In this document: positions 3,040 to 47,620 of the stretch, one piece after another | Numbering within the stretch: the first letter of the stretch is position 1 | How the letters are laid out: the number at the start of each line of letters is the position of its first letter | IMG/VR virus record: IMGVR_UViG_3300046507_000667 | Span: 62,001 to 126,000 of that record | Direction: 5' to 3' (one strand) | Length of the DNA stretch: 64,000 bases | Notes under the pieces: model-generated | Seen by the model: only the letters and a program-made list of their open reading frames with translations | Databases searched by the model: none | What the model was told of the DNA's origin: nothing | Made by a program: the position numbers and the translations under genes

Positions 3040-4217
3040 ATGGCAATTACAGCTAAAAATCGTAAAAAGGCAGAGAAGTTAATCCTTGATACTTTAAGTA
3101 AGCTTGAGCCATCAGGTATGAATACCGAGAAGTATCGAAAGATCTTCTCGGAAATGTCGGATAAACAGTTCGTAGATTACTTCAAAAAACTTAAAGAAGA
3201 TCGTAATGCACACTTATATGTGGAGTGTGACTTATACGGTAAAAATCAGATTACTTTAGGATCAATCCAAAAAGCTGCTGATTTCTTGAAAGTACCTTTA
3301 GAAGAATATGTTTATATTCGACATAAAACACCTGATGGAACTCCTATCAGAAGTAAGTTCCGTGTACCGGTGATGTATATTCATTTGAAGCGTAATTGCG
3401 CCCATATACTAGAAATAGTGTATGCGTATTACATTAATTGCTGGAAGTCCCTAAAGCTAGTTTAATCTAGATTGAGTATAGCCAAAAGCTATATTTCTAT
3501 ACAATGGGTAATCAGCAGCACTATTTTAACTTATACTTTACCTCGTAAAAATAAATAGTGTTCAACGACTATTCCTGCAATGGAAGTACATATCAAGTGA
3601 TATGGAAATGTGTAATATCCTTCTAGGATAATGATATAGTCTCTTCTTATGTGAAAGCATAAGCTGATAGTTAACAACTATCAATAAGATTAAGTATGCA
3701 ACAGATCCAGACTAAGAAAGTCAAGACTTCTATTGATATTGAATCTGGTAATGTACGTTCGAATATTACTGGTAACTTAAATCAAGATAATAAGTCGGGC
3801 CGATTCACTGATGCAGATACACAAGCTTTTCTATCTATCTTATCTGATAAGAAACTTGAAATTGGAAAGACTGGTAAGAAAGAATCTGCTATTCTTAATG
3901 AATTACTATTGGCTCGTGGTGGTAATGCTGCTATGAAAGCTGCAATGTCAAAGAATATTTCACTCTTTGGCGCTGCTTCCCTACAAGACGTTGATGTAGG
4001 TACATCATATGCAGCAGTATCACCGGGAATTAGTAGTGCATCAGCTATTACAGCAGAACCAGCTAAGAATACTATTGATGCATTCTTAATTGGTGCTGGT
4101 ATGAAGTCTGACATCATCTATAAGTCATTAGTTACACTACAAGGTGAAGCTAGTAAGTCTGAAGGTGGTGATGGTGATGAATTTGCATCATTAAGCAGAG
4201 CATTAGGTCGTGAATAA
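3040..4217 (+). CDS. RNA polymerase beta-like C-terminal subunit, probably virion RNAP; join(3040..3393,3699..4217), about 290 aa
   Basis: Joined sequence MYIHLKR|QQIQTKK...GRFTDADTQAFL resembles the beta C-terminal YMLKL..H....K...GGQRFGEME..AL region; two ORFs separated by an intron core. Confidence 0.7.
3394..3698 (+). ncRNA. Group I intron (IA2-like), ORF-less, cis
   Basis: P1 GCGU/GCGC; P2 with GAAA loop; P AATTGCTGGAA; Q AATCAGCAGC; P6a CACTATTT/AAATAGTG; R TTCAACGACTA; S GATATAGTC. Confidence 0.9.
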
Positions 4218-8650: not shown

Positions 8651-9412
8651 TTATGCTGTTGGTGCAGCTACGATTTGCTTAATTGTGTCAATAAGTCTAT
8701 GCTTAAATGCAATTAAGAAATCGGGGAAGTGTTCTGATGAAAGAACGTTAGACATAAGAGTTTGATATGATTCACATGATTCCGAATCAAATAACTCATC
8801 AAGTGCTTCTCGTTCTTCAGAAGTTAGGTCGATATAATCAAAGAATGTACCAATATCAACATTTTCAGCACCTAGTACTGTATTAGCAATATCTAATGCA
8901 TTAACGATAAGAATGATATATTCAGGATTATCTAGATTAAGCTCAGTCTTGATATTCTGATATACTAGATCTTTTCTAGGTGTAGATTGCTTAAACTCAG
9001 GAGCAAGAGTCTTCTTATTGTTATAAGCAAAGCTAATTAGATAAGTTAGTAGATTCTCACGGAATCCAATATAGAAAGTATTGTAAATCAAATTAACTAA
9101 GAAGCGTGCCTGTGGTGCTTCATTAAATTGGTCTGAAATAGCTTTCTTATCAACACCAAAATCTTGACAGAATTGATTGACAATTAATGTATTAGCGGCA
9201 GCTTCTACATTAGTTGCATCATCAATTTGATCTTGATCTAAATCAAATCTATCTTTAATAAAATCAACTTTAGTTACAATCGTATTGTATAAATCATTAG
9301 ATGGTTTATTTGCAATAAGATCTTGGCGGTTTGATAGATATTCATCTAATCCTTCTTGTAAAATGGAGGCTGTCTCCTTTACAAGAATACTGTCACTGTC
9401 TAAACTAAACAT
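8651..9412 (-). CDS. Hypothetical acidic protein, 253 aa
   Basis: ORF closely coupled to the end of terminase exon 2. Confidence 0.8.
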   Translation of the reverse strand: MFSLDSDSILVKETASILQEGLDEYLSNRQDLIANKPSNDLYNTIVTKVDFIKDRFDLDQDQIDDATNVEAAANTLIVNQFCQDFGVDKKAISDQFNEAPQARFLVNLIYNTFYIGFRENLLTYLISFAYNNKKTLAPEFKQSTPRKDLVYQNIKTELNLDNPEYIILIVNALDIANTVLGAENVDIGTFFDYIDLTSEEREALDELFDSESCESYQTLMSNVLSSEHFPDFLIAFKHRLIDTIKQIVAAPTA

Positions 9413-9419
9413 AATTGTC

Positions 9420-10838
9420 TCACGATCTAAAATGTCTTAAAGGGTCAGCACTAGCTTTACCAGCTAGCATATTGGCTAAATTAGTATCGATACCACTTGA
9501 CTGTGGTCCCTTTACCTTATTATTTTTCTGTCCTAGAATCTTAGCTAGCTGGTCTGGTGGTACACCGTCTAGGATCATTTGGGTTAGTTCAGCAAAGTCA
9601 TGATTTTGACCCTTATTAACTGCAGGATCATCCACAACTTTTCGAGTAATAGCATTGAAATTCTTAGCATTTTGAGCAACTTTAGCTCGTGTTCTTAAGA
9701 ATCTACCAATATTATTACCATATCGAACTACATATTTTACGAATAAGTATGAGAATAAGACGTCATCATGCATACCTACTTCGTGGTCAATACGTCCATT
9801 CTTATAGATAAGACCTTTGACATCATCATATAACTCTGGAATTGCTAAAAGCTCAGGTTCATCTGCAACGATTTCTTTAAGAATATCGATCATTAGAGGA
9901 CGTGAGGCTTTATCAGTAGTAATACCATACTTAATACTATCTGTCTTAGTAGCAGGATTATTAGCTGTTTTGTCTTTATCAGCTAATTTATATTCATAGT
10001 AAATATTCTTAGGAATTACATCTAAGAGATTTTCTACCAGACCTTTACCATAACTATTAAATTCAGGGACTACAATACAGTTAGGCAATTCTTCTTGAAC
10101 TAGCTGTGCAATAAGAGAGCTATATACATTAATATCAATAGTATTATGCTTAAATACTGCTACAGGAGCAAAATCTTTTTCAGGATCAGTAATAGTAAAT
10201 GCTGAATTATCTGCATCAAGACCACCTGCAGTATCAACACCCATGAAATAGACTTTCTCTTTCTTTAGTTCTTCATAGAGTACGATAGGGAATTTGAAAG
10301 TACGGATTTCACCAGTACTCTTGATTACCTTCTTGATATCCATATATTTGATACCAATAGGTGTTCTTTTCTTACTATCAATAATATCTAATTGCTCTTC
10401 AGTAAAGACCGAATTATCTGATGATTTTGTCCATTGTAGGTCAATTTCACGTTTGATAATAGCACGGTCATTATTAAGAACACGACATTCTTTCTTATAC
10501 CACTCTTCATCAAGACCTAATTGTTTCCATGTATAAGAAATATACAAGAAGTCATTTGATGAGTTAGTAGCAATGTAATCTTTTAATATATCACGGTCCC
10601 AATCATACATCTCTTCAACGAAGACACAAGCGTTATCTATAAGACCTTTACAGAAAGCGCCCGCCGGATTGTCAATGTTTGAAGGAGTTGTAGAGATAAT
10701 ACGACCGTGTGGTCTACCATGAGCTTCAGCAATTTCAGATACTTTTGAAATAGCTGGACCTGCTGACTTAAAGATAATATCGTTATACTTTAAGAATGCG
10801 AATTCGTCAGGCCAATAGATCGGGATAGACATACCACG
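9420..10838 (-). CDS. terL: Terminase large subunit exon 2 (Walker B plus RNase H-like nuclease), 472 aa
   Basis: RGMSIPIYWPDEFAF (Walker B), STTP, GVDTAGG, HDDVLFS; starts right after the intron terminal G at 10839. Confidence 0.9.
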   Translation of the reverse strand, partial: RGMSIPIYWPDEFAFLKYNDIIFKSAGPAISKVSEIAEAHGRPHGRIISTTPSNIDNPAGAFCKGLIDNACVFVEEMYDWDRDILKDYIATNSSNDFLYISYTWKQLGLDEEWYKKECRVLNNDRAIIKREIDLQWTKSSDNSVFTEEQLDIIDSKKRTPIGIKYMDIKKVIKSTGEIRTFKFPIVLYEELKKEKVYFMGVDTAGGLDADNSAFTITDPEKDFAPVAVFKHNTIDINVYSSLIAQLVQEELPNCIVVPEFNSYGKGLVENLLDVIPKNIYYEYKLADKDKTANNPATKTDSIKYGITTDKASRPLMIDILKEIVADEPELLAIPELYDDVKGLIYKNGRIDHEVGMHDDVLFSYLFVKYVVRYGNNIGRFLRTRAKVAQNAKNFNAITRKVVDDPAVNKGQNHDFAELTQMILDGVPPDQLAKILGQKNNKVKGPQSSGIDTNLANMLAGKASADPLRHFRS

Positions 10839-10976
10839 CTTATGTTATATGATAATCGTTAATTATCAAGCTTATGCTTTCACATAAGATCAGACTATAT
10901 CTTCACCTGTTAAGGGTTCTACATTTCCATTCTACTTAGAATGTACGTAATAGTCGTTGAACAAATTCATCAAAAT
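10839..10976 (-). ncRNA. 3' half of a group I intron (P6a 3' strand, P7-P9, terminal G)
   Basis: TTGATGAATTTG-TTCAACGACTA...GAAGATATAGTCT-GATCTTATGTGAAAGCATAAGC...CATAAG|CGTGGT. Confidence 0.9.
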
Positions 10977-10987
10977 TTTTGTATGTT
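10976..10987 (-). promoter_or_regulatory. Late-type promoter-like motif for the 3' intron half
   Basis: AACA-TACAAA-AA; AACA exact, -1 position is A rather than T; predicted +1 at 10976. Confidence 0.5.
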
Positions 10988-10989
10988 CC

Positions 10990-11017
10990 AAAAAAAACCT
11001 ATGATTTCTCATAGGTT
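10990..11017 (-). terminator. Intrinsic terminator
   Basis: AACCTATGA-GAAA-TCATAGGTT followed by a T run on the minus strand. Confidence 0.85.
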
Positions 11018-11032
11018 GCTAACTCCTAAGAG

Positions 11033-11662
11033 TTAGACTTCAAAGGTTTGAATGGTAACTCGGAAACGACCCGGAAGAGAATGTACTTCATCCGAATCAA
11101 GAGTTTTGAAAGTATGTGGACTTGACATAACTTTCTTACCAGTCAGTTTACCATCAATCTTTTCGATCATATCTACTACACGATCGTAATGCTCTTTCAG
11201 TTGATCTGCAAAATCTACTTGATCATGCTTATTGCGAAGTTCCCATTCACCATGAAGAAGTTCTTCCAAATAGTGAGGTAGATGTGTAAGGGAATAGTCT
11301 ATGGAAATACCATCCAATCCCTTTTCATCCAATTCTTCTTTCGAAACATCACGAGTTACTGACCAATCAGCAGCATCACTCAGTTGTCCATAGGACGCAT
11401 AAGGATATTGATTATGCCAAACTCGGTCATCGCCAACTATTTGGCTCTTGAAGATAAAGCCATCATGCTTAGGCTCTGCATCTTCACGATCCCATTCATT
11501 ACGAACCTTATGGTGTTCTGTACATTTCAACCAGAAAATGTGAATTCCTTTCAGAGTATTATCCCAAGGGAGATAAGTATTGCTCATCAAAGCATCATTA
11601 CCATTTGCATAATTGAAATGGACACGAATGAACGGAATGATCGAACCGACTTGAAAACGCAT
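11033..11662 (-). CDS. Hypothetical protein, 209 aa
   Basis: ORF with AAGGA SD. Confidence 0.8.
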   Translation of the reverse strand: MRFQVGSIIPFIRVHFNYANGNDALMSNTYLPWDNTLKGIHIFWLKCTEHHKVRNEWDREDAEPKHDGFIFKSQIVGDDRVWHNQYPYASYGQLSDAADWSVTRDVSKEELDEKGLDGISIDYSLTHLPHYLEELLHGEWELRNKHDQVDFADQLKEHYDRVVDMIEKIDGKLTGKKVMSSPHTFKTLDSDEVHSLPGRFRVTIQTFEV

Positions 11663-11688
11663 GATAATTTCCTTAAATAGAAGAATAG

Positions 11689-12060
11689 TTATTTAGGAGC
11701 AGTAAGACGAATTAGCGTCAATTCTGCATCCTTATAGTAGCCATGTGGATCATCCACTGTTCGGCATTGAATTAAAGCTTCTTCCAAGCTAGATGCTTGA
11801 TATTTGAATTCTTTTGTATCTGACCACCTACCTGTAGTTTTTCTTTGGATATGGTAGGTAGCTCTAATATTAGGCCACTTAATACAATGTAGCTCTGATA
11901 CCATACTGATGCCTTTCAATTTCCATTGAGCACCAATTTCGTCTTCCAAGATTCCAACAAGTGTTACTACATGCTCATGTGCTTGAAAATCAGTATCAAT
12001 TAGTTTTAAAGTACCTGTTGGCATAAGCCATTCAGTGAACTGATTGAAACGAGGTTTCAT
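11689..12060 (-). CDS. Hypothetical protein, 123 aa
   Basis: ATGA-coupled ORF. Confidence 0.75.
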   Translation of the reverse strand: MKPRFNQFTEWLMPTGTLKLIDTDFQAHEHVVTLVGILEDEIGAQWKLKGISMVSELHCIKWPNIRATYHIQRKTTGRWSDTKEFKYQASSLEEALIQCRTVDDPHGYYKDAELTLIRLTAPK

Positions 12061-12548
12061 AGCGTAATAGTAACTGCATCAGGAAACAGTTTTTGCAGAT
12101 GATTTTCCATTTCCTTACGACGAGCTTCACGAATATGAAAATCCGAATTTGGCGAATCATCACCAAGAAAGAATTCATATACTCGCTTTGGTTCTTCAAT
12201 TCCTTTTTCTTTTCGAAGCGCTATAAGCTTTTCACGCATAGGAGAAGGAGCATGATAAGTATGAACACGCTTAATTGCTTCATCAATACAATTAGTAATG
12301 GATTCTTCATTATCACCAAAGTATTGACCACTACCTTCTTGATAATTATGTAATTGGCGAATAGCAAAGCTAAATCCACCAACAGTCATAGTACGACGAA
12401 TACGAAGAAGTGATAGGAATCCTCCCGGATTATCCTTTACACCATATTCAATATAATTGAAAAGACCTTCTTTCAAAAGAACCATCATAGATGTCAGTTG
12501 CTTCTTAACTTGAAGTTCCTGATCAATCTTTTCTTGAGTCATCAGCAT
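12057..12548 (-). CDS. Hypothetical protein, 163 aa
   Basis: ORF in a tightly packed operon. Confidence 0.75.
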   Translation of the reverse strand: MLMTQEKIDQELQVKKQLTSMMVLLKEGLFNYIEYGVKDNPGGFLSLLRIRRTMTVGGFSFAIRQLHNYQEGSGQYFGDNEESITNCIDEAIKRVHTYHAPSPMREKLIALRKEKGIEEPKRVYEFFLGDDSPNSDFHIREARRKEMENHLQKLFPDAVTITL

Positions 12549-12554
12549 AATTCT

Positions 12555-12770
12555 TTACCGTTTAATTTCAGGAGGAAGAGCATTATAATAATGATAATTA
12601 GCAAGCCAACCATTAATCAATGCTTTAGCAAGAGTCTCATCTTCAGTGTAATACAATGAAGGCCAAGATTCCTTGACATACATATTGCAAAATCGTTGTC
12701 CAAGGCGAAGTTTATCTTGTTTCCTTGCATTATGGAGACTCAAGAATTTTGCATATGCTTCAGTAGTCAT
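12555..12770 (-). CDS. Hypothetical protein, 71 aa
   Basis: ATGA-coupled ORF. Confidence 0.75.
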   Translation of the reverse strand: MTTEAYAKFLSLHNARKQDKLRLGQRFCNMYVKESWPSLYYTEDETLAKALINGWLANYHYYNALPPEIKR

Positions 12771-13048
12771 TGATCACCCTCATCAAGCCACTTCATAATA
12801 CGTTCAAAAAGCGACTCCTTTACTTCACGAAATTCATTAACACAATGAAATCGCTTCTCTCCAGCACCCATAGTACGAAAGGTAATGCTAAACCAATCTC
12901 CAGTTCGATTATCGAAACAAGGATCGACATACTTAATGGAAGGACGATACTTTCCATTAGGAAGAAGACAAGTCCTAAAAGGACTATTTTCTTCTGCAAC
13001 CTTCTTAAGAACTTGTGTAAGTTCTTCATGGGTCATTGGACGGCTCAT
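12767..13048 (-). CDS. Hypothetical protein, 93 aa
   Basis: ORF with AAGGA SD. Confidence 0.75.
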   Translation of the reverse strand: MSRPMTHEELTQVLKKVAEENSPFRTCLLPNGKYRPSIKYVDPCFDNRTGDWFSITFRTMGAGEKRFHCVNEFREVKESLFERIMKWLDEGDQ

Positions 13049-13057
13049 GTCTTTTCC

Positions 13058-13309
13058 TTAATGACGAATAATTTTGAAATAGTCCGCAGTGATATTACCA
13101 GCACCTTCAAGGCGCTTGCTATTGTGACCAACCACTCCCCACACAATTGAAGCATTTTTATGTGAATCTACACTGTGGGCAGTTACCATAGCACGTTCAA
13201 GTACATCAAAGTTGGCGAACGGTTTGGTAAATTCAATGATACTACCAGTCTTAACGTTCATCTTCTTTCCAAAAATTAAAATGTTTATTAGGAAAGTGGG
13301 AGAGACCAT
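13058..13309 (-). CDS. Hypothetical protein; start possibly at MNVKTG
   Basis: ORF in operon. Confidence 0.65.
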   Translation of the reverse strand: MVSPTFLINILIFGKKMNVKTGSIIEFTKPFANFDVLERAMVTAHSVDSHKNASIVWGVVGHNSKRLEGAGNITADYFKIIRH

Positions 13310-13339
13310 TTAGATCTCTCCCTTCGTCAATCTGCTTGC

Positions 13340-14440
13340 TTATGCAAACGGATTGAAGAATTCATACCAACGACCATGGTTCAGACGATAGCTCGTTTGC
13401 ATGTTACGAAGCTTTTCAGCTTCGGTATACTTCCAATTGAACAGAATGTCCTTGAAGCCTTCGCCCAGCGTTTTCAGGCATTCACCTGCATCACGCAGAA
13501 CATAGAGCGTCTTGTCAACGATAAAACCACAAACCTTCTTGGTCTTATCGATAACATAGACAGTCACCTTCTTGGTACCATTCCATGCATACACACAAAC
13601 CGACTGAACACCTTCAATCGTCCAGTTGATTGCCTTACCAGCACCTTCAACAACGTCACCGCAGAAGTCGCCAATCTTGTCGAGGATCGTAACTTGTTCG
13701 ACCTTCGCATTCACGGCAGCATTTGCAATTTCTTCTTCAACATCGACACCAGCAGCATGCAGTTGCTCTTCGATAGCGCCTTTCAAGATCTCATTGTCCA
13801 CTGCTTCTTGGACCGATTCCGGCTTGGGCATCGATGCTGAAACTGCTTCTTGCACGATTTCCTTTGCGGGAAGATGTGCATGTTCTGCAGCATTAACGAT
13901 GTTAACCATCGCTTCAGCAGCATTAGCTACTTTCGATGCAATCGGACCGAGATCAGCAGATTCCTTCACTGCTTGAACTTGAGCCTTGATATCGACAACT
14001 TCGATATCTTTCGGAAGAATCAGCATGAAAAGTACGTTGTGATGCTTTTCATCGCTCGTAACCGAAACGATTTCTGCATCAGCACCGCATTCATGAGCGA
14101 TGTGTTGAAGACGAACTTCAACTTCATCACCATTGCTAGGTGCTGCAACTTCTTGACCATCGATTTTTGCATCAAGAGAAACATGCAGAATCTGAGCCTG
14201 ATGGCCATTCAGATCAAGTTGTTCTTCAAGTGCAAAGAACGAATCCTTGAACGTTGCTTGATACACTTTCAGCGATTCTTCCAGCTTGGTCAAGCTGAAT
14301 TTCGAAGCATCCGTATTGAAAGTCGGGATGACGACTTTGATGTCCTTCATCGAACGTGCAACCGGTTTCTTAGCCGAAACCTTCTTAGCTGCTGCGTTGA
14401 CGTTACCATTCTTTGCTGCGACGTTGATGTTCTTTGCCAT
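13340..14440 (-). CDS. Hypothetical protein, 366 aa, with Ala/Lys-rich N-terminus and amphipathic repeats near the C-terminus
   Basis: ORF after the early motif at 14524-14532. Confidence 0.85.
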   Translation of the reverse strand: MAKNINVAAKNGNVNAAAKKVSAKKPVARSMKDIKVVIPTFNTDASKFSLTKLEESLKVYQATFKDSFFALEEQLDLNGHQAQILHVSLDAKIDGQEVAAPSNGDEVEVRLQHIAHECGADAEIVSVTSDEKHHNVLFMLILPKDIEVVDIKAQVQAVKESADLGPIASKVANAAEAMVNIVNAAEHAHLPAKEIVQEAVSASMPKPESVQEAVDNEILKGAIEEQLHAAGVDVEEEIANAAVNAKVEQVTILDKIGDFCGDVVEGAGKAINWTIEGVQSVCVYAWNGTKKVTVYVIDKTKKVCGFIVDKTLYVLRDAGECLKTLGEGFKDILFNWKYTEAEKLRNMQTSYRLNHGRWYEFFNPFA

Positions 14441-14579
14441 GATTGAAAGAGACCTTATAGAGAATTAGAAGAGTTATTACTAAGTGTCTTGAATTTCGAA
14501 TATTTCTATTCGTGATCAGGTGAATAATATATCAGCATTATATGCTTTAATACGCTTATTTCACCGGATCATACAAATA

Positions 14580-15176
14580 TTACAAAGAGATAAAGCTACG
14601 TGCATTCAAAAGGAAGTCTTCAAATTCAGGAAGTTCCTTTTGCACATGAAGCAGATTGTTGAAGAGGCTCGTAAGGAATGCTGCCATATCTTCAGAAACT
14701 TCGATAGACGTACGGCCATTCAAACGATATACGATATTGACTTCCTGAACGATACTACAGATAATATCTGAAGCAGCATTAGCAAGATCTTTATCTTCAA
14801 ATCGTTCAATACGAGAAGCAATTGCAAGCAACGTTACAGCCGTATCATTCCAAAGGTGAATTCTCGGAAGATATGCTTCGAAGTTATACTTTAGATAGAT
14901 CTTGAATGATGTCAGATCGACTTCAGTACCTTCTTCCATTGCTCGTTCAATAGCATGCTGAGAAAGACGTGAAAGAGTCTTTTCAATTCTACTATCAGAA
15001 TTATCTCCCAACATACCTTGCTTCTTTAATTCTCCAACGAAATCTTTAATCACTTCATTAGTCTGAAGTTCTTCAAAGAAATTCAGAACACGAGAAGGAT
15101 CTTCCTTATCTAGCTTAATCAGCAGTGCAGCTGCTTTGTTAATGGCTTTATTCGTCAGATTGAAATTCTTCGACAT
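14580..15176 (-). CDS. Hypothetical protein, 198 aa
   Basis: ORF with AAGGA SD. Confidence 0.8.
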   Translation of the reverse strand: MSKNFNLTNKAINKAAALLIKLDKEDPSRVLNFFEELQTNEVIKDFVGELKKQGMLGDNSDSRIEKTLSRLSQHAIERAMEEGTEVDLTSFKIYLKYNFEAYLPRIHLWNDTAVTLLAIASRIERFEDKDLANAASDIICSIVQEVNIVYRLNGRTSIEVSEDMAAFLTSLFNNLLHVQKELPEFEDFLLNARSFISL

Positions 15177-15257
15177 GATTCTTTTTCCTTGAGAATGTTG
15201 GAATGCTTATATTGCGATCAAGGAAAAAATATATACTTATTAGCTATTTAAATACGA

Positions 15258-15491
15258 TTAATCGTTAGTCTGAATATTACCCAATTTCTTGGGAATTAAT
15301 ACTTCCTTAGCTACTTGCTCAAATTCGGGCCATAGCTTACGAAACTTGACAAAAGGAATAGAAATTGTTACTCCTTCAACTTCAATTTCAACTTCACGCT
15401 TTTCTTTATTTGCTTTGATAGATGATGACATTTTCTTTCCTAAATAGTTAACAAAAATCTCGACTCCGCATATCTGGGTCATAGGCACCAA
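15258..15491 (-). CDS. Hypothetical protein; start possibly at MSSSIK
   Basis: ORF after the early motif at 15496-15504. Confidence 0.65.
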   Translation of the reverse strand: MVPMTQICGVEIFVNYLGKKMSSSIKANKEKREVEIEVEGVTISIPFVKFRKLWPEFEQVAKEVLIPKKLGNIQTND

Positions 15492-15525
15492 GATAATAAT
15501 ATATTTCTGAAGTATTAGTTAATGC

Positions 15526-15638
15526 TTGATGAATTTGCTGCTGATTGCCATAGATACTAATTTACATTTTTCCGGAATGCTAGTTAGGATCTTTACGGGG
15601 TTCCAGCAATTAATAGAATTTATACAGAGCCGTAAGTA
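15526..15638 (-). ncRNA. 5' half of a group I intron (P1/IGS, P3-P5, P6a 5' strand)
   Basis: Exon ACAGGGU pairs with IGS GCUCUGU; P AATTGCTGGAAC; Q AATCAGCAGC; ends CAAATTCATCAA. Confidence 0.9.
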
Positions 15639-16307
15639 ACCCTGTTTGTCTGCTTGTTCTTCAGAAATTGGCTGACCATTGACGTCGATCTTATTATTAC
15701 GCTGCACACTATGTACTGATTCAAGATTATCAGTATCACCTCTATCTGCTAAGGCATCTTGAATGTATTTAGGTAAATGTAATGTAATATCCTTAAATCG
15801 CTTTAAGTTATTCTTAGCATCACCTAAGCTCTTATTTGCAAAGAGCATATTAGTATTTTTAGTACTAAAGTTATAGATGTAATTTAGTGCTGCTGCAATA
15901 GAAATTGTTTTACCACGCTGACGAGATAGTAAGCATATCAAGTCAAAGTTATTAAAAATTGCCCAAGTAATAGCTAAGTTACCCGGATGCAATTCAAATT
16001 TAACAGTACCACCCGGAGCTACAATCTTTACTACTTCTCTTAGATAGTAGTAAGGATTTTTTGTAATTTCCGTAATGATTTTTGTCTTTTGTAACTCAGT
16101 TAGATTTTTTCTATGAGGATCAATACCTTTTAAACTTTTATCATAGAGTCGTAGAAAGAACTTGTTATTTTTAATACCACGTTCCTTCAAATACTTAAAC
16201 ATCTTGATGAAAGAAAGGTTCTTAGTCTCGGTGTCAATTACATAGTCACCATAGTCCGTTTCCCCATAGATAGCTTTATTGTAAGCTGCTTTACTAAGCG
16301 ATACCAT
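15639..16307 (-). CDS. terL: Terminase large subunit exon 1 (N-terminal ATPase), 223 aa
   Basis: NPYYYLRE, LHPGNLA, LLSRQRGKT Walker A; coding ends at ...ADKQG where the intron begins. Confidence 0.9.
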
Positions 16308-16335
16308 AAGCTTTCCTTTAAAAAGAGGGATTTAC

Positions 16336-16347
16336 TATGTGAGTGTT
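16336..16347 (-). promoter_or_regulatory. Late-type promoter for terL exon 1
   Basis: AACA-CTCACA-TA. Confidence 0.7.
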
Positions 16348-16434
16348 CAACTTCTCCGTTCACACAAAAAATTCAAGAAAATTGAAAAAAAAAGAAGCCC
16401 CGTTAGAGGCTTCTTCCTAGCTATAAGCTGGAAG

Positions 16435-40167: not shown

Positions 40168-43100
40168 ATGTCTGTAATTAACCTAGCAAGAATGAATTCT
40201 TCGAAGCTTTACAAGGCTTCTCAGTTACTTATTGTCAACAACTCACGCACTAAGCCAGTTCTTAACCTCTTCTTCGGTAAGGAAGGGACGACTGACAGTC
40301 TCGTTGAGGACGTTAATTATATTCACTTTTCGCCAAATGCGCCGAAGAAAATTTGGTTCCCGGACTATAAACTTAACGTCGCAAACCTAAAGACCTCCAG
40401 AGACCTTACAGTTCGTAATAGTTTCTTCAACGATCTTAAGTCTCATAAGCTTAGCTTCAATAAGGTGAATAACCTAGCTACCATTGATGATAAATGGGCT
40501 AAAAAGCCTATTATTGTAGACCTAAGCAAGTTCCGTGACGAGTACAATCAATACTGTAACGACCATAAGAAGACATATACTACAGGATATCGTTTCCTAA
40601 AGGCTATGCTTCAATTGGTACTTAAAAATCTTCCTACTGGAATGGAAACTCGATTCTTTATTGAGATTCCTTCAGAGCAAGATACATTTATCAAAAGTCT
40701 TAAATATGGTCTAGACCATGACTATAAAGCGCTACATCCAATTTTAAAGGACTATAATGTCATTTTCTACAATCCCAATACAGGGATAGTGTATAAAACT
40801 GACTTTAATAATCCTCAGATGAAGGCAAGAGGCAATATCCTGATTGGTAAGTTTATGCGTATGCATACTACTGGTCTACCAGATGATGCTATTCTTGCTA
40901 ACGATCCAGATATTGAAGTAACAACAGATGCTAATACGCCTACTGAAGATAAGAAGATTGTTGCAGCTACACAAGATGTAGTTCGTGATGAATCAGATAA
41001 AGATCAGAATGGCGATTCAGAGGAAGTTGAAACTACTATTCCAGCTAAGCCTACAGAGCCATTAGATGATGAATCTGATGAATCTGAAGAAGTACAGCCA
41101 GATCAAGTTGCACCAGCAGAAGAAGAGCAACAAGCTCCTCTTGACCTAAGTATGATTCTTAGTACTGCTGAAACTGAAATTAATACTCTTTATGCAGAAA
41201 ATCAAGCATTTCTTAAAAAGCACATGCCTAAACAAGAGGCTGCTTTAAAAGAACTTGAAAAGGAAGCAGATAAGCTTGCTGCAGATAAGACATTGGATCC
41301 ACTAGTGATTAATGATAAGACAATTATCAATGATCACGTTCGTGAAACTACAATGTCATCCATTACAAATGGATACTATAAGAAGCAATTTAAGCGAGAT
41401 GTGCTTAATATTGTAAAAACATTAAATACTGATCCAGAGAATCCAGTAGTCATTACTAAATTTGCAGTCAATGATAGTTCTACAGCTATTAGCCGACTAG
41501 ATGAACTTCATATTGAATTTATTGATAAAAAGTTCAAGAAGCATACTTTCAAAGTAGATGTACCACGTCTAAGTCACGATGGTTTCCTTTATATAAATGG
41601 TAATAAGCAATTTATTAGTAAGCAAGCAACGCTTCTGCCAATTATTAAAGAAGCAGATGATCGAGTTCAGATTACTACCAATTACCAGAAGACCTTCTTA
41701 TTCCGTAAAGGAGATAAGATTAATGGTCAAGTTGATAGAATTCTAAGACTTATTGTAGGTACAAAGTTTGATTCAATTAGTAAAATTCCCGGTAATTCTA
41801 CTGAATCTAACCTTGGATACAATGTATCTATTCCTTATAACTATCTTGCCAAGAAGCTATTCACTGCAAAGTTTAATGGTGCAGAAGGAATTATTTTCTT
41901 CTTTAACCAACAAAATGCAAGAGAAAAAGCTGAAGAAGCTGGTTTTAAGGTTGACTATACAAAGTACAATGTAGTTGGTGCATATTTATTACATGACAAG
42001 GAACAAGATTTAATTCTTGAAGATATCAATGATCGTTCTATTTGGCAATACTATAGACCAAATCAACGCAATGTCAATTCTGGAAAGATTGTAAAACTTG
42101 ATACATCAATTGTAGGATTTCTTACAAGTATTATTTCAGTATCAAAAGATGAATCGCTTCAAACTGCATATCGTGCATTAAAGCCTTCTTTAAGTCTTTC
42201 CTTCACAGAAGTAAAGATTGCAGCAAAAGCTATGGGTCTTGGACCACTTATTGCATCATTCAAGGGTCTCATTCCAGCACTTGATCTTTATCATGTGAAG
42301 TATCATATTGAAGAGAAACGTATTGCTAAAAAAGAAAGTGAAATCATGCTTGCTTTTAAGGATTACTATCTCTACATTGATACAGAATTTGATTCAGCTA
42401 AAGAACTTTATGTAAATAGCTTACTAGCTTTAAATAGTGCTGATTATACTTTAGCAGAAACAACTCGCATGTCACCAATTTTCCTTGAATATTATGAGGA
42501 ATATACTGGTAATCGTAATACAGCTAAGGCTCTTTTGAACTTTGAATCATCAATGATTGATCCGATTACAAAAGAAATCTTAGAAGAAATGAAGCTTCCA
42601 ACAGATTTTCCAGAGCTTCTTCTTGTAGCTAATACGATGCTAGGTGACTATCAGCGTAAGCTTAAGAATGACATGAGTAACTTCCGTTTCCGTGATTCGG
42701 AAGTAATTGCAACAGCAGTCTATAACGTACTCCGTGATTCATTTAATGCTTACAAGCGTACAGTTCGTTCTGGTACAGTACAGCCTATTTCTGCAAAAAA
42801 GGATGAGGTTATTAAGCGCATTCAATCAATGCCTAATGTTGAACCATATTCAACACTTAATCCATTCCTTGAGCTAGAAACTAAAGCAAAATCAACTTTT
42901 AAGGGACCATCTGGATTAAATCCAACATATCCTTAATATGTTTTAGGGTATGTTTTATGAGAAAAGCATTAACAACAGAAAAATTTCAAGAAAATGTAAA
43001 TACTATTTTTGGAGCTGATACATATACTGTAATTTCAGAGTATACCAAATCTAGTGGATATATTTCAATTAAGCATTCAAAATGTGGAAATACATTTGAT

Positions 43101-45533
43101 ATAGTTGCCAATGATTTTACCAAAGAGTCTAAAAGGGCTAGATTTTATGATACATGTCCAGCATGTAGAACTTCTAAAAGAAGTCCTTTGGATAAGGTAA
43201 AAGAAGATATCAGAATTGCTACTAAAGATAGATTATTACTTTTAGAATATGGTGGAACAACACATACCCCATCTAAATTTAAATGTAAAATCTGTAATTA
43301 TGATGATATCAAAATATCTACGCATAGTTTATTAGGAAATTTAAAGTCAAGATCAAATTCTAATTCATGGGGATGTGCTGTTTGTTCAAAAAAGAAACAG
43401 AAAACTACTCAAGAATTTAATAAAGAAATTGATCAACTTTTTAATGGTAATATTGCACTTATTTCAGAATATGTAAATGTAGGGACTTATGTATCTTTGA
43501 AATGTAATAAATGTACATATGAATGGAATACCATGCCATCAACTATTCTAGGCGGATCCCAGTGTCCAGCATGCTTAAGAAGTTTTAGAGATTCTAAGCA
43601 AATTAGAAGAGTGATTGAATTTCTTGATAAATATGAAGTACCTTTTGAAAGAGAAGTAACTTTTGAAGGTCTAGTTTATAAAAAGCAACTGTATTTTGAT
43701 TTTTGTATTGAAACAGAAGATACTTATTTCTTGATTGAATTCGATGGACAGCAGCATTTTAGAGGCTGGCAAGGTAATGAAGATAATCTAAATGAAAACC
43801 AAATTCGAGATAATATCAAGAATGATTTTTGTAAAGATAATGATCTTCCTTTACTTCGTTTGCATTATAAAATGACTCTGTCTGAAATTGATAAGGCTAT
43901 TTATGATTTTCTCTTCAGTCCAGAATAAACTTCTTTAATTGCTGGAAACCCTCTAACAAAGGCAATCAGCAGCGAAGCCCTTAATTGGGAACGTTCAACG
44001 ACTATTATGTACTTATCAAATGATAAGGAAATAGGAAGCACCTAATTAGGTGAAGATATAGTCTATTCTTATATGAAAATATAAGTTATGAGCTAATGAC
44101 TCATAGTAAATATAAAAGTAAATTCAGATGATGCATATACGCCTGAAATTCGTGCATATGATAAGTCAATGCTAGGTGTGTATGGTATTTATACGCCTAT
44201 TTCATCACAAGTTGGTGTAAGTCGTGGTCTTGTAATGAATCCACGCTATCATTCAACTCGTGGCTATCTAAAGGATATGGATCTAAAGACTGCTCGTGCT
44301 GATAATTTATTCACTGCGGCAGAACTTCTAAATGTCTTTACACCAAAGCATGCTGATAGTCCTCGTGCTATTATGGCTTCAGTACAAGGTCGTCACTTGA
44401 CACCAACAAAAGTACAGGATCCTTACCTAGTTGGTAGTGGTGTTGATAAAGCACTTCCGCATATGGTTGGTCAAGACTTCGCCTTTAAAGCAACAGATGA
44501 TGGCACAGTTATTAAGATTGACCAGAAGAAAGAACTAGCAATTCTACAATATAAGAATGGCGAGAAAGCAGCAATTGATTTCTCACCAAAACCAGCTAAA
44601 AATAGTGGTGGTGGCTTCTTTATTCAGAATAAGCTTGATCTTAATGCAGAAGTTAAGGTAGGCTATAAATTCAAGAAAGGTGATATTCTTGCTAAGGATG
44701 ATAACTTCTTCAAGGATATGCTAGATGGTTCTACTGGCTTTGCGGCTGGTCGTCTATCAAAGCTTGCTGTTCTCGCTCTACCTGAGACATTCGAAGATTC
44801 GTGTGTTATTACACAACAAGTTGTAAGTGATATGTCATCGGATATTATTAATGAACGTGAAGTAGTTTTAAAGAAAAATTCACGTATCATTAGTGTGGCT
44901 AACGTTGGTGATGAAGTTGAAGTTGATACACCACTAGTTGTATTCGAAGAAGTAGGTTCTGATGAAACATTAGCTGTTGCTGCTTTAGAAAAGCTTGATG
45001 CACAAACTAAAGGCACTATCAGTGAACTAGCTCGTTCGACTGCAAAGTCAAAGTTTGCTGGTAAGATTTTCGCTATTCGTATTTATTACAATGCAGAATT
45101 AGATGAAATGCATCCAACGCTAAAGAATATTGTCGAGCAGTACAAAGACAAATATGATTCTAAGGCAAAGATCATTCAGACACTGAAGAAGGATGAAATT
45201 ATTCAGCAACCTTCAACTGAAAAGCATAATGGTGAAAAGCTATTAGGTAATGATGTTGATGGTGTTGTTATCAAGTTCTTCATCATGCATGATGATAAGA
45301 TGGCTATTGGTTCAAAGGTAACTGCATTCACTTCACTAAAGTGTATTATTGCAGAGACTATTCCAGAAGGAAAGGAACCATATACAGAGTACAATAAGGA
45401 TGAAGAACTATCAATGTTCCTAAGTCCATTATCTATTGTCTCTCGTATGACTACTGACTTCTATCTCTTAGGCTTTAGTAATAAAGTTATTATTGAACTA
45501 GAGAATCAAGTATTAGATCTTCTAGAAGAATAA
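40168..45533 (+). CDS. Large RNA polymerase beta-like subunit, probably virion RNAP; join(40168..42916,44119..45533), about 1387 aa
   Basis: GFLYINGNK, spliced FKGPSGLNSDDAYT, DSPRAIMASVQGRH, TFEDS.VI, GSKV....LKC.I, SPLSIVSRM motifs. Confidence 0.88.
42917..44118 (+). mobile_element. Group I intron carrying a homing endonuclease in the P1 loop
   Basis: Exon UCUGGAU pairs with IGS GUCCAGA (43918-43924); P, Q, R and S elements at about 43935-44060; terminal G at 44118 restores the frame. Confidence 0.9.
42957..43928 (+). CDS. Intron-encoded homing endonuclease: Zn-ribbon repeats plus Vsr/PD-(D/E)XK-like domain
   Basis: Repeated C..C units; FEREVTF...FDF...LIEFDGQQHF C-terminal nuclease motif. 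Confidence 0.8.
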   Translation: MRKALTTEKFQENVNTIFGADTYTVISEYTKSSGYISIKHSKCGNTFDIVANDFTKESKRARFYDTCPACRTSKRSPLDKVKEDIRIATKDRLLLLEYGGTTHTPSKFKCKICNYDDIKISTHSLLGNLKSRSNSNSWGCAVCSKKKQKTTQEFNKEIDQLFNGNIALISEYVNVGTYVSLKCNKCTYEWNTMPSTILGGSQCPACLRSFRDSKQIRRVIEFLDKYEVPFEREVTFEGLVYKKQLYFDFCIETEDTYFLIEFDGQQHFRGWQGNEDNLNENQIRDNIKNDFCKDNDLPLLRLHYKMTLSEIDKAIYDFLFSPE

Positions 45534-45675
45534 TACAAAACTTAAATTCCCCTATACTCTAACATTGGAGTATAGGGGATATTTTTGTGTGATCCGATAA
45601 CATGCTTTATTTCAAGGATATATTATTTGAGTGGATAGAAGTACATGACTCTCTTAATAATTCAGAAGGTATACT

Positions 45676-47507: not shown

Positions 47508-47581
47508 GCGACTATAGTTCAGACGGATAGAACACAAGCCTTCTAAGCTTGGGGTCACTGGTTCGAATCCAGTTAGTCGCA
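47508..47581 (+). tRNA. tRNA-Arg(UCU), CCA not encoded
   Basis: Acceptor GCGACTA/TAGTCGC; anticodon arm CAAGC-CTTCTAA-GCTTG; T arm GGTTCGAATCC; late motif at 47476-47487. Confidence 0.92.
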
Positions 47582-47620
47582 CTTAGAATTTTAGTTTTAA
47601 ATCACAAATATTTTAAAGAA

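What the first reader, a model, noticed from the sequence alone, without database searches (positions are those of the whole stretch)
10962..11017. Terminator directly followed by a late-promoter motif at the start of the 3' intron half
On the minus strand, a GAAA-loop hairpin with a T run (11017-10990) is followed within 2 nt by AACA-TACAAA-AA. With the spacing of the other late motifs, +1 falls at 10976, 3 nt before the P6a pairing strand. This is the layout expected if exon 2 with its intron half is an independent late transcript. A second hairpin at about 13295-13325 also lies between the halves. Caveat: the -1 base is A, not the consensus T.
Basis: partly seen in the sequence, partly recalled or inferred. 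Interest (0 to 1): 0.75.

Follow-up and report, generated by a model that had tools for sequence, protein, structure and literature searches.

The report
Terminator closing an intron-borne gene cassette
The hairpin and T-run end a nine-gene cassette lodged inside a self-splicing intron of a jumbo phage's DNA-packaging gene, while the "late promoter" beside it is a poor match that relatives lack, so how the gene is expressed across the terminator stays open.

Summary
The sequence is as described. On the minus strand a 9-bp GAAA-loop hairpin with T8 (11017-10990) is followed by AACA-TACAAA-AA (10987-10976), 2-3 nt before the P6 3' strand.

The setting is the large terminase gene of a phiR1-37/AR9-like jumbo phage. 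It is split at ...ADKQG|RGMSIPIYW... by one 4,800-nt group I intron (15638-10839). Loop L6 of that intron holds a 4.55-kb cassette of nine unknown ORFs, two early-type promoters and this terminator.

The terminator reading holds. phiR1-37 and three metagenomic relatives have the same layout of promoter, cargo and terminator in L6. In phiR1-37, read density falls about 70-100-fold across it.

The promoter reading does not hold:
- This phage's late promoters are AACA-N6-TAG. The site has A at -1 and T at +2 and scores 5.7 bits against 10.8-19.1 for true sites.
- In all four relatives the terminator T-run runs straight into P6, leaving no room for a promoter.

Exon 2 is therefore most likely reached by read-through, followed by cis-splicing. 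Trans-splicing of separate RNAs is not excluded. No RNA data could be laid on this phage.

The parts
16335..16347 (-). Consensus late promoter AACACTCACATAG of the terminase gene. The predicted start is A at 16336, 29 nt before the ATG at 16307.
   Evidence: Motif scans. It is the only AACA-N5-7-TA match upstream of the intron on this strand. Within the intron there is no N6 match, and the only N5 or N7 matches lie inside exon 1 or cargo ORFs.
15639..16307 (-). Terminase large subunit exon 1 (223 codons, ends ...ADKQG).
   Evidence: PHROG terminase hits. Homology to intact TerL proteins stops exactly at residue 223.
15525..15638 (-). 5' part of the group I intron. It holds the internal guide GGCTCTGT (15631-15624) pairing with the exon end ACAGGGT, the P3 5' strand (15618-15613), P4-P5-P4' (15608-15539) and the P6 5' strand CAAATTCATCAAG (15537-15525).
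   Evidence: Rfam Intron_gpI partial hit on model positions 60-140. Sequence and comparison with phiR1-37 and AR9. P6 helix of 13 pairs, reached by 0 of 500 shuffles.
15496..15504 (-). Early-type promoter core ATATATTAT, just past the P6 5' strand. It is the first promoter of the cargo.
   Evidence: One of 16 copies of the exact core ATATATTAT in the window. The phiR1-37 counterpart is annotated as a promoter and was verified by RNA-seq.
11033..15431 (-). Cargo in loop L6: nine ORFs, at 15431-15258, 15176-14580, 14440-13340, 13261-13058, 13048-12767, 12770-12555, 12548-12057, 12060-11689 and 11662-11033. None has a known function.
   Evidence: ORF list. No convincing Pfam, PHROG or NCBIfam hits and nothing from the atlas search. 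No paralogues in the genome and no similarity to phiR1-37 g144. One ORF has a homologue outside the intron in L192.
14524..14532 (-). Second early-type promoter core ATATATTAT inside the cargo.
13298..13322 (-). Strong intergenic hairpin without a T-run, between cargo ORFs.
10990..11017 (-). Intrinsic terminator of the cargo operon: 9-bp stem, GAAA loop and T8, starting 15 nt after the last cargo stop codon.
   Evidence: An orthologous terminator sits at the same place in phiR1-37, L192, L193, L195 and L197. Read density drops about 70-100-fold across it in phiR1-37.
10976..10987 (-). Partial late-promoter match AACA-TACAAA-A-A inside a spacer of about 15 nt that only this phage has between the T-run and P6. 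It is probably fortuitous.
   Evidence: Matrix score 5.7 bits, rank 74 of 127,948 positions. Consensus statistics. Absent in relatives. Unchanged in a strain variant that has T9.
10839..10974 (-). 3' part of the group I intron. It holds the P6 3' strand TTTGATGAATTTG (10974-10962), J6/7 and the P7 5' strand TCAACGACTA (10960-10951), a P7.1-like hairpin, the P3 3' strand GTAGAA (10922-10917), P8, the J8/7 and P7 3' strand GAAGATATAGTC, P9 with a GAAA loop (10888-10871) and the terminal G at 10839.
   Evidence: Rfam Intron_gpI, 36.3 bits, E = 1.3e-6. Sequence and comparison.
9420..10838 (-). Terminase exon 2 (RGMSIPIYWPDEF..., with Walker B and the nuclease domain). No Shine-Dalgarno sequence precedes its ATG at 10832.
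   Evidence: The junction is colinear with intact TerL proteins (ADKKG-RGNTTACQWLDEY in L004).

Best explanation
What it is. The element at 11017-10990 is the intrinsic terminator that closes a self-contained cassette of genes under early-type promoters. The cassette has two ATATATTAT-type promoters and nine ORFs. It sits in loop L6 of one 4.8-kb group I intron that interrupts the large terminase gene just before its Walker B motif.

How it works.
- Early in infection the virion RNA polymerase transcribes only the cargo, and the terminator keeps that transcription out of the 3' intron part and exon 2.
- Late in infection the non-virion polymerase starts at the consensus late promoter in front of exon 1 (16347-16335).
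- It copies exon 1, the 5' intron part and the cargo. A fraction of polymerases read through the moderately strong terminator into the 3' intron part, exon 2 and the downstream structural gene.
- P3, the 13-bp P6 and P7 then close the ribozyme core around the looped-out cargo, and the intron splices itself out in cis. This gives a low level of terminase mRNA.
- The AACA-N6-AA just after the terminator is a chance partial match in a spacer peculiar to this phage.

Shown: the anatomy of intron, cargo, promoters and terminator; the splice junction; and the conservation of the layout.

Inferred: the timing, the read-through, and the cis mode of splicing.
For: - Junction. Exon 1 ends and exon 2 starts at adjacent residues of many intact homologues.
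- Ribozyme. The two halves match complementary parts of Rfam Intron_gpI. P6 across the insert is 13 bp, reached by 0 of 500 shuffles. It is complementary with quite different sequences in phiR1-37, L192, L193, L195 and L194. P3, P7.1 and P8 show compensatory changes against phiR1-37 (sequences).
- Same site. AR9 and Listeria phage LPJP1 carry an uninterrupted intron at this exact position.
- Promoters. The early-type motif occurs 16 times in the window and twice in the insert. The phiR1-37 copy was verified by RNA-seq.
- Late promoters. There is no consensus late promoter inside the intron. A consensus one precedes exon 1.
- Relatives. In four relatives the T-run runs directly into the P6 3' strand, with 5-8 nt to TTCAACGACTA. 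The 3' part can therefore only be made by read-through.
- phiR1-37 read counts per nt: about 1.2 for exon 1, 108-124 for cargo and 1.1-1.65 for exon 2.
- Candidate promoter. It scores below all true sites. T at -1 is nearly invariant in AR9's mapped late starts.
- Precedent. [quoted passage not shown]
Against: - No RNA data exist for this phage. Read laying gave only DNA contigs and one uninformative RNA contig from a relative.
- AR9 transcriptomics reports strong termination at operon ends, so efficient read-through is an assumption.
- If the 70-100-fold drop in phiR1-37 reflects true termination, only about 1% of exon 1 transcripts would reach exon 2 in cis. Yet exon 1 and exon 2 RNA are about equimolar. 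That fits trans-splicing, polymerase-specific termination or differential RNA stability at least as well.
- The window phage alone has a spacer of about 15 nt after the T-run, and its AACA has the geometry of some true promoters (T-run, 0-2 nt, then AACA).
- The exon 1 frame runs 39 codons through the 5' intron part, which should hamper folding during a long cis wait.
Confidence: 0.62

Rival explanations
1. Trans-splicing fed by read-through RNAs. Most exon 1 transcripts end at the cargo terminator. They carry exon 1, the 5' intron part and the cargo. The 3' intron part with exon 2 comes mainly from the abundant cargo transcripts that leak through the terminator. The two RNAs associate through P3 and the long P6, and splice in trans.
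For: - In phiR1-37, cargo RNA is about 100 times more abundant than either exon, while exon 2 is about equal to exon 1. About 1% leakage from the cargo promoter alone would account for all exon 2 RNA.
- P6 is unusually long across the break, at 9-14 bp in all cargo-bearing relatives, against 4-5 bp in AR9 and L089.
- The break lies in L6. From my own knowledge, the split T4 td intron can trans-splice there (Galloway-Salvo et al. 1990).
- L199 intron 1 and L088 have a bidirectional terminator directly after the P6 5' strand.
Against: - No natural trans-spliced group I intron from a phage or bacterium turned up in the library searched; the ones found are organellar.
- The halves are colinear and on one strand, so cis transcripts are always possible.
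- The read counts are steady-state values confounded by RNA stability.
Confidence: 0.2
2. AACATACAAAAA is a working, if weak, late promoter. The 3' intron part with exon 2 is an independent late transcript starting at 10976 and is trans-spliced to the exon 1 RNA.
For: - The AACA lies 2 nt after the T-run, a geometry seen at 3 of 41 consensus late promoters.
- The start would fall 2-3 nt before P6.
- It ranks 74th of 127,948 positions under the matrix.
- AR9 has 17 non-consensus late promoters among 118.
- The spacer holding it is an insertion relative to all relatives.
- The downstream structural gene (9412-8651) has no promoter of its own.
Against: - A at -1 and T at +2 replace the TAG core.
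- T at -1 is present at all 46 AACA-N6-TA sites that stand out in non-coding DNA here. In AR9's mapped list it is replaced by A only once, at a barely enriched internal start.
- Other AACA-N6-AA sites in this genome do not look like promoters.
- Nothing equivalent exists in phiR1-37, L192, L193, L195 or L197.
- My estimate is that a match of this quality is about as likely by chance as from a real promoter.
Confidence: 0.08
3. No splicing. The intron is a relic, and the terminase works as two polypeptides: a 262-aa exon 1 product, and an exon 2 product starting at ATG 10832.
For: - phiR1-37 is annotated this way, as g143 and g145.
- An ATG lies 6 nt after the 3' splice site.
- AACATAAGCGTGG at 10846-10834 would put a start 3 nt before that ATG.
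Against: - The ribozyme core and its long-range helices are kept by compensatory changes across lineages whose TerL proteins are only about 50-60% identical.
- The split falls inside the ATPase fold, right before Walker B.
- No Shine-Dalgarno sequence precedes ATG 10832.
- The Met is part of the protein in L089 and L194, where TerL is uninterrupted at this junction.
- The AACA at 10846 is AATG in phiR1-37.
Confidence: 0.04

Closest known systems
Yersinia phage phiR1-37 g143 / g144 / g145 (NC_016163)
   Same: Same terminase split site, a homologous intron core and the same L6 layout: an early-type promoter right after the P6 5' strand, then cargo, then a terminator right before the P6 3' strand. 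The promoter was verified and the terminator drop is visible in published RNA-seq.
   Different: It carries one unrelated 526-aa cargo gene instead of nine ORFs. The terminator T-run is itself part of P6, with no spacer and no AACA-N6 motif. The record annotates two separate terminase fragments and no intron.
Bacillus phage AR9 terminase intron 1, and the AR9 g189 intron carrying early gene g190
   Same: AR9 terminase intron 1 sits at the identical codon with a similar guide sequence and core. [quoted passage not shown] The late-promoter grammar is the same, AACA-N6-T-A/G.
   Different: AR9 terminase intron 1 has a minimal P6 and no cargo. The g190 case is a single gene. No multi-gene operon with a terminator is described.
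T4 td, nrdB and sunY group I introns with a homing-endonuclease ORF looped out of a peripheral helix (my own knowledge)
   Same: A phage group I intron with an ORF looped out of a peripheral stem, and an ORF with its own promoter. Split td halves can trans-splice at L6a in vitro and in E. coli.
   Different: The cargo there is one homing endonuclease tied to intron mobility. Here it is nine non-endonuclease ORFs of unknown function with two promoters and an intrinsic terminator.
Naturally trans-spliced group I introns of organelles (for example Prasinoderma and Helicosporidium mitochondria; PMC3873408, PMC2813288)
   Same: The intron is broken in a peripheral loop, with other genes between the pieces.
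   Different: There the pieces are scattered or lie on different strands, so cis transcripts are impossible. Here the pieces are colinear and no separate promoter for the 3' piece is supported.
Phage 'morons' (promoter-gene-terminator cassettes inserted between genes; my own knowledge)
   Same: An autonomous transcription unit bounded by its own promoter and terminator, with cargo that varies between related phages at a fixed insertion point.
   Different: It is inserted inside a ribozyme loop within an essential gene rather than between genes.

Membership tests
Group I intron (Rfam RF00028) | P1 formed by the exon end and an internal guide sequence, with a U.G pair at the 5' splice site | tested here: met
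   ACAGGGU (15645-15639) pairs with GCUCUGU (15630-15624), and the splice-site U pairs with G. The same holds in phiR1-37 and AR9.
Group I intron (Rfam RF00028) | Conserved catalytic core (P4-P6 domain; R and S elements forming P7; P3 and P8) | tested here: met
   The 5' part matches model positions 60-140. The 3' part carries UCAACGACUA and GAAGAUAUAGUC aligned to the model. P3 is UUCUAU/GUAGAA here and UUCCGU/GCGGAA in phiR1-37.
Group I intron (Rfam RF00028) | Score at or above the curated gathering threshold (50 bits) | tested here: inconclusive
   The halves score 36.3 and 17.1 bits separately. The model cannot bridge a 4.55-kb insert. Joined sequences could not be submitted to the tool.
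Group I intron (Rfam RF00028) | Terminal G before the 3' splice site, and an in-frame exon junction | tested here: met
   G at 10839. The junction ADKQG|RGMSIPIYW is colinear with intact TerL proteins.
Group I intron (Rfam RF00028) | Actual self-splicing | not testable with these tools
   No RNA run holds this phage.
AR9-type late promoter of the non-virion RNA polymerase (AACA-N6-T-A/G) | AACA at -11 to -8 | tested here: met
   10987-10984.
AR9-type late promoter of the non-virion RNA polymerase (AACA-N6-T-A/G) | T at -1 and a purine at +1 (in this phage TAG at -1 to +2) | tested here: not met
   -1 is A, +1 is A and +2 is T. In the genome 46 non-coding gene-oriented AACA sites carry TA, 28 of them TAG. 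The AR9 table has one A at -1, at a weak start.
AR9-type late promoter of the non-virion RNA polymerase (AACA-N6-T-A/G) | Score within the range of the phage's own late promoters | tested here: not met
   5.7 bits against 10.8-19.1 for the 18 sites the matrix was built from; leave-one-out scores of those sites run from -0.7 to 15.6.
AR9-type late promoter of the non-virion RNA polymerase (AACA-N6-T-A/G) | Conserved at the same place in relatives | tested here: not met
   phiR1-37, L192, L193, L195 and L197 have no spacer and no motif.
Intrinsic (factor-independent) terminator | Stable stem-loop directly followed by a T-run, placed after a stop codon | tested here: met
   9-bp stem, -11.1 kcal/mol, T8, 15 nt after the stop at 11035-11033.
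Intrinsic (factor-independent) terminator | RNA 3' ends or a coverage drop at the site | not testable with these tools
   There is only indirect evidence: the orthologous phiR1-37 terminator shows a drop of about 70-100-fold in reads per nt.
Naturally split, trans-spliced group I intron | Break in a peripheral loop, with the halves held together by long-range helices | tested here: met
   The break is in L6. P6 (13 bp) and P3 (6 bp) bridge the halves.
Naturally split, trans-spliced group I intron | The halves cannot be, or are not, co-transcribed: separate loci or strands, or a separate promoter for the 3' piece | tested here: not met
   The halves are colinear on one strand. No consensus promoter precedes the 3' piece.
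Naturally split, trans-spliced group I intron | Separate precursor RNAs observed | not testable with these tools
   No RNA data.

The most novel reading that the evidence does not exclude
The terminase mRNA of this phage and of phiR1-37-like phages is assembled by trans-splicing. An exon 1 RNA with the 5' intron part ends at the cargo terminator. A separately initiated RNA carrying the 3' intron part and exon 2 comes from read-through of the cargo promoter or from a weak start at 10976. The two are joined through the long P6 and P3. This would be the first natural trans-spliced group I intron outside organelles. It would also make the terminator a device that uncouples an essential late gene from an early operon nested inside it.
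Probability: 0.25. Interest if true: 0.85.

Novelty: new variant of a known kind. Interest (0 to 1): 0.5.

Why it matters
Group I introns in phages normally carry at most one homing-endonuclease gene. Here the L6 loop of an intron in an essential late gene serves as a landing pad for whole transcription units, each with promoter, cargo and terminator. The cargo differs in every relative examined, and this phage holds nine genes there.

The arrangement places an intrinsic terminator between the two halves of a ribozyme and between the two halves of the terminase gene. The phage must therefore either read through its own terminator or splice in trans. Either answer says something new about termination by the unusual jumbo-phage RNA polymerases, or about intron biology.

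phiR1-37 is cultivable and already has RNA-seq data, so the question can be tested directly. The work also corrects a likely annotation error: g143 and g145 of phiR1-37 appear to be two exons of one terminase gene, although that record annotates no intron and splicing has not been shown.

Tried and rejected
- RNA evidence. The DNA and RNA run searches found only rhizosphere DNA runs plus one RNA run of a relative. Laying four runs on 10400-16350 gave no joints and no informative RNA. One 248-nt contig ends 24 nt short of the junction.
- Near DNA matches in the phage collection: none.
- Cargo function. Pfam, PHROGs, NCBIfam and two atlas searches gave nothing usable.
- Homology between the window cargo and phiR1-37 g144: none.
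- Close relatives of exon 2, to test conservation of the spacer: the next best is only 53% identical. The 92% relative of exon 1 sits on a 1.9-kb contig.
- A pattern scan of viral contigs with the guide sequence returned mostly chance hits. Only AR9, phiR1-37 and the window's own contig were relevant.
- A naive best-helix search for P3 was not significant on its own. P3 rests on positional homology and compensatory changes.
- Other ways to read the site as a promoter were rejected: other AACA-to-TA spacings, a sigma-70-type promoter, and other AACA-N6-AA sites in the genome, none of which looks like a promoter.
- I looked by eye for an anti-terminator pairing between the 5' intron part and the terminator stem. 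Only a 5-nt match turned up, which I judge to be chance.

Full report
**Observation.** On the minus strand a 9-bp stem closes a GAAA loop: AACCTATGA at 11017-11009 pairs with TCATAGGTT at 11004-10996. A run of eight T follows (10997-10990). The hairpin folds at -11.1 kcal/mol, and 1 of 200 shuffles folds as well. Two bases later come AACA (10987-10984), then TACAAA, then A at 10977 and A at 10976. The second hairpin also exists (13322-13298, -18.8 kcal/mol) but has no T-run.

**What the surroundings are.** The window belongs to a 249-kb phage genome with terminal repeats. The DNA runs that hold it are rhizosphere metagenomes. Its nearest cultured relatives are Yersinia phage phiR1-37 and Bacillus phage AR9, jumbo phages reported to carry uracil in place of thymine in their DNA.
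- The ORF 16307-15519 is the N-terminal part of the large terminase, and 10832-9420 is the rest.
- Many relatives have an uninterrupted gene. In them, the residue matching the last homologous residue of exon 1 (G223...ADKQG) is directly followed by the residues matching RGMSIPIYWPDEF.
- Exon 1 therefore ends at 15639 and exon 2 starts at 10838.
- The split lies just before the Walker B motif, so neither piece should work alone.

**The 4,800 nt between the exons are one group I intron.**
- The exon end ACAGGGU pairs with the guide GCUCUGU, giving a U.G pair at the splice site. A G at 10839 precedes exon 2.
- The 5' part matches the P4-P6 region of Rfam Intron_gpI. The 3' part carries the R and S core elements, P8 and P9 (36.3 bits, E = 1.3e-6).
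- The two parts are tied together by a 13-bp P6: CAAAUUCAUCAAG at 15537-15525 with UUUGAUGAAUUUG at 10974-10962. None of 500 shuffles reaches 13 bp. A 6-bp P3 adds to this.
- Against phiR1-37, P6 has a completely different sequence yet is still complementary (UAAUGAAAAA/UUUUUCAUUA). P3 changes from UUCUAU/GUAGAA to UUCCGU/GCGGAA. The P7.1-like hairpin and P8 also co-vary.
- AR9 and Listeria phage LPJP1 have an uninterrupted intron at the same codon.

**What fills loop L6.** The loop (about 15524-10975) holds nine ORFs with no recognisable function. It also holds two copies of ATATATTAT, at 15504 and 14532 on the minus strand. That exact 9-mer occurs 16 times in the window, most copies in the extended form ATATATTAT(T)-N4-TG. 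It resembles the AR9 early promoter. The phiR1-37 promoter between g143 and g144, which RNA-seq verified, has the same form. The terminator under study follows the last cargo stop codon by 15 nt. The insert is thus a complete transcription unit inside a ribozyme loop.

**The layout is conserved while the cargo is not.** I searched for short exon 1-like proteins and fetched their contigs.
- L192, L193 and L195 have the same site and the same order of parts as phiR1-37; L197 is nearly identical to phiR1-37 in the stretches compared. The order is: P6 5' strand, early-type promoter, one cargo ORF (278-526 aa; the window's cargo is unrelated to g144 and to these loci), terminator, P6 3' strand.
- L194 shows the same design at a different terminase site.
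- In every one of these, the terminator T-run runs straight into the P6 3' strand, with 5-8 nt from the T-run to TTCAACGACTA at the shared site (14 in L194). In the window the distance is 28 nt.
- In those phages no transcript that starts after the terminator could contain a complete P6. The 3' intron part can only be made by polymerases that pass the terminator.
- L088 and L199 carry cargo on the opposite strand, with a bidirectional terminator right after the P6 5' strand.
- One window cargo ORF has a homologue outside the intron in L192. The cargo therefore consists of ordinary accessory genes.

**Is AACATACAAAAA a late promoter?** AR9 late promoters read AACA-N6-T-A/G, with the last base as the start.
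- In this genome, 88 AACA sites lie in non-coding DNA facing a gene. Of these, 46 have TA at -1/+1 and 28 have TAG. The other 42 show no pattern.
- A consensus site, AACACTCACATAG, precedes exon 1. No AACA-N6-TA match lies inside the intron.
- The candidate has A at -1 and T at +2.
- Under a matrix built from 18 well-placed sites it scores 5.7 bits, against 10.8-19.1 for those sites. It ranks 74th of 127,948 positions.
- In the part of AR9's table of mapped late starts that I read, T at -1 is replaced by C four times and by A once, the latter at a barely enriched internal start.
- The other AACA-N6-AA sites in this genome do not look like promoters.
- A strain variant in another metagenome has T9 instead of T8 and the same spacer, which says nothing either way.
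- In favour: the geometry of T-run, two bases, then AACA occurs at some true promoters, and the spacer is peculiar to this phage.
- I estimate that a match of this quality is about as likely by chance as from a real promoter. It therefore adds no support to an independent transcript.

**How exon 2 is reached.** The parsimonious reading is as follows.
- The terminator ends transcription of the cargo from its early-type promoters.
- Late transcription from 16336 runs through the intron.
- Part of it reads through the terminator, which is of middling strength (only three G-C pairs).
- The intron then folds around the looped-out cargo and splices in cis.

Published phiR1-37 counts (total gene reads, not length-normalised) give about 1.1-1.2 reads per nt for exon 1, 108-124 for the cargo gene and 1.1-1.65 for exon 2, at all stages. 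This shows that the intron-internal promoter is very active and that RNA falls about 70-100-fold across the terminator.

Those counts do not settle cis against trans. The near-equal exon levels could reflect a stable spliced mRNA. Equally, about 1% leakage from the cargo promoter would account for all exon 2 RNA. In that second case most exon 2 RNA is not physically linked to exon 1, and trans-splicing through the long P6 would be attractive. AR9 work reports strong termination at operon ends, so read-through is an assumption. I found no report of a natural trans-spliced group I intron in a phage; the known cases are organellar.

**Verdict.**
- The promoter, and hence the 'independent late transcript', is not supported.
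- What is actually there is a terminator-bounded nine-gene cassette under early-type promoters, nested in L6 of the terminase intron. This is a new variant of the known 'ORF in an intron loop' theme, and it recurs across phiR1-37-like phages.
- The open and testable question is whether the terminase mRNA is made by read-through and cis-splicing (my preference, about 0.6) or by trans-splicing (about 0.25 over both versions).

Noticed in passing
window 3382-3663 (+) and 43854-44085 (+): Two complete, compact group I introns (69.8 and 94.5 bits) interrupt other genes: 3040-3465 / 3696-4217 and 42957-43928 / 44169-45533. The whole genome has five full Rfam hits.
   Followed up: partly
genome G000:C1:173381-174470 (-), outside the window: Another group I intron has a 329-aa ORF in L6 that resembles the intron ORF of Listeria phage LPJP1 and may be a homing endonuclease. 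The ORF runs into the P7-P8 core. It has no promoter motif and no terminator, so it is the conventional design, in contrast to the terminase intron.
   Followed up: partly
window 7816-7790 (-), 45546-45575 (+), 28191-28165 (-): Several consensus late promoters are embedded in near-perfect inverted repeats, for example CCCTATACCTTTTAAACAAAGGTATAGGG. The AACA sits in the loop and the TAG start in the 3' arm. This is intriguing because the AR9-type polymerase reads the template strand and can start on single-stranded DNA.
   Followed up: no
window 10846-10834 (-): A second partial late motif, AACATAAGCGTGG, lies in the last bases of the intron. It would put a start 3 nt before ATG 10832. It is not conserved in phiR1-37, which has AATG.
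   Followed up: partly
window 15638-15519 (-): The exon 1 reading frame continues for 39 codons through the whole 5' intron part and stops just past the P6 5' strand. phiR1-37, AR9 and L192 have TAA directly at the 5' splice site. Ribosomes would plough through P3-P6 of unspliced RNA.
   Followed up: no
L196:1000-1300: In a metagenomic relative, the 3' intron part and exon 2 are preceded by two ORFs on the opposite strand, with no terminator. The contig ends before any exon 1 is seen. If exon 1 lies elsewhere, this would be a truly split gene.
   Followed up: partly
L199:2860-3640 and L088:1280-2070: These terminase introns, at neighbouring sites, carry a cargo ORF on the opposite strand in L6. 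A bidirectional terminator sits directly after the P6 5' strand.
   Followed up: partly
L199:3870-4870: Here a consensus late promoter, AACAATAAAATAG, sits inside L6 and drives the intron ORF. Intron cargo in this clade can therefore be early-type or late.
   Followed up: no
L001 (phiR1-37) 8795-10375: By published read counts, the cargo gene g144 is transcribed about 100-fold more than the terminase exons at all stages (about 170,000-196,000 total gene reads). It has no known function.
   Followed up: no
window 47508-47582 (+): tRNA-Arg (TCT) gene.
   Followed up: no
window 9412-8651 (-): The gene right after exon 2 occupies the same position as phiR1-37 g146, which is annotated as a structural protein. 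It has no promoter of its own, so its expression also depends on transcription crossing the terminator and the 3' intron part.
   Followed up: no
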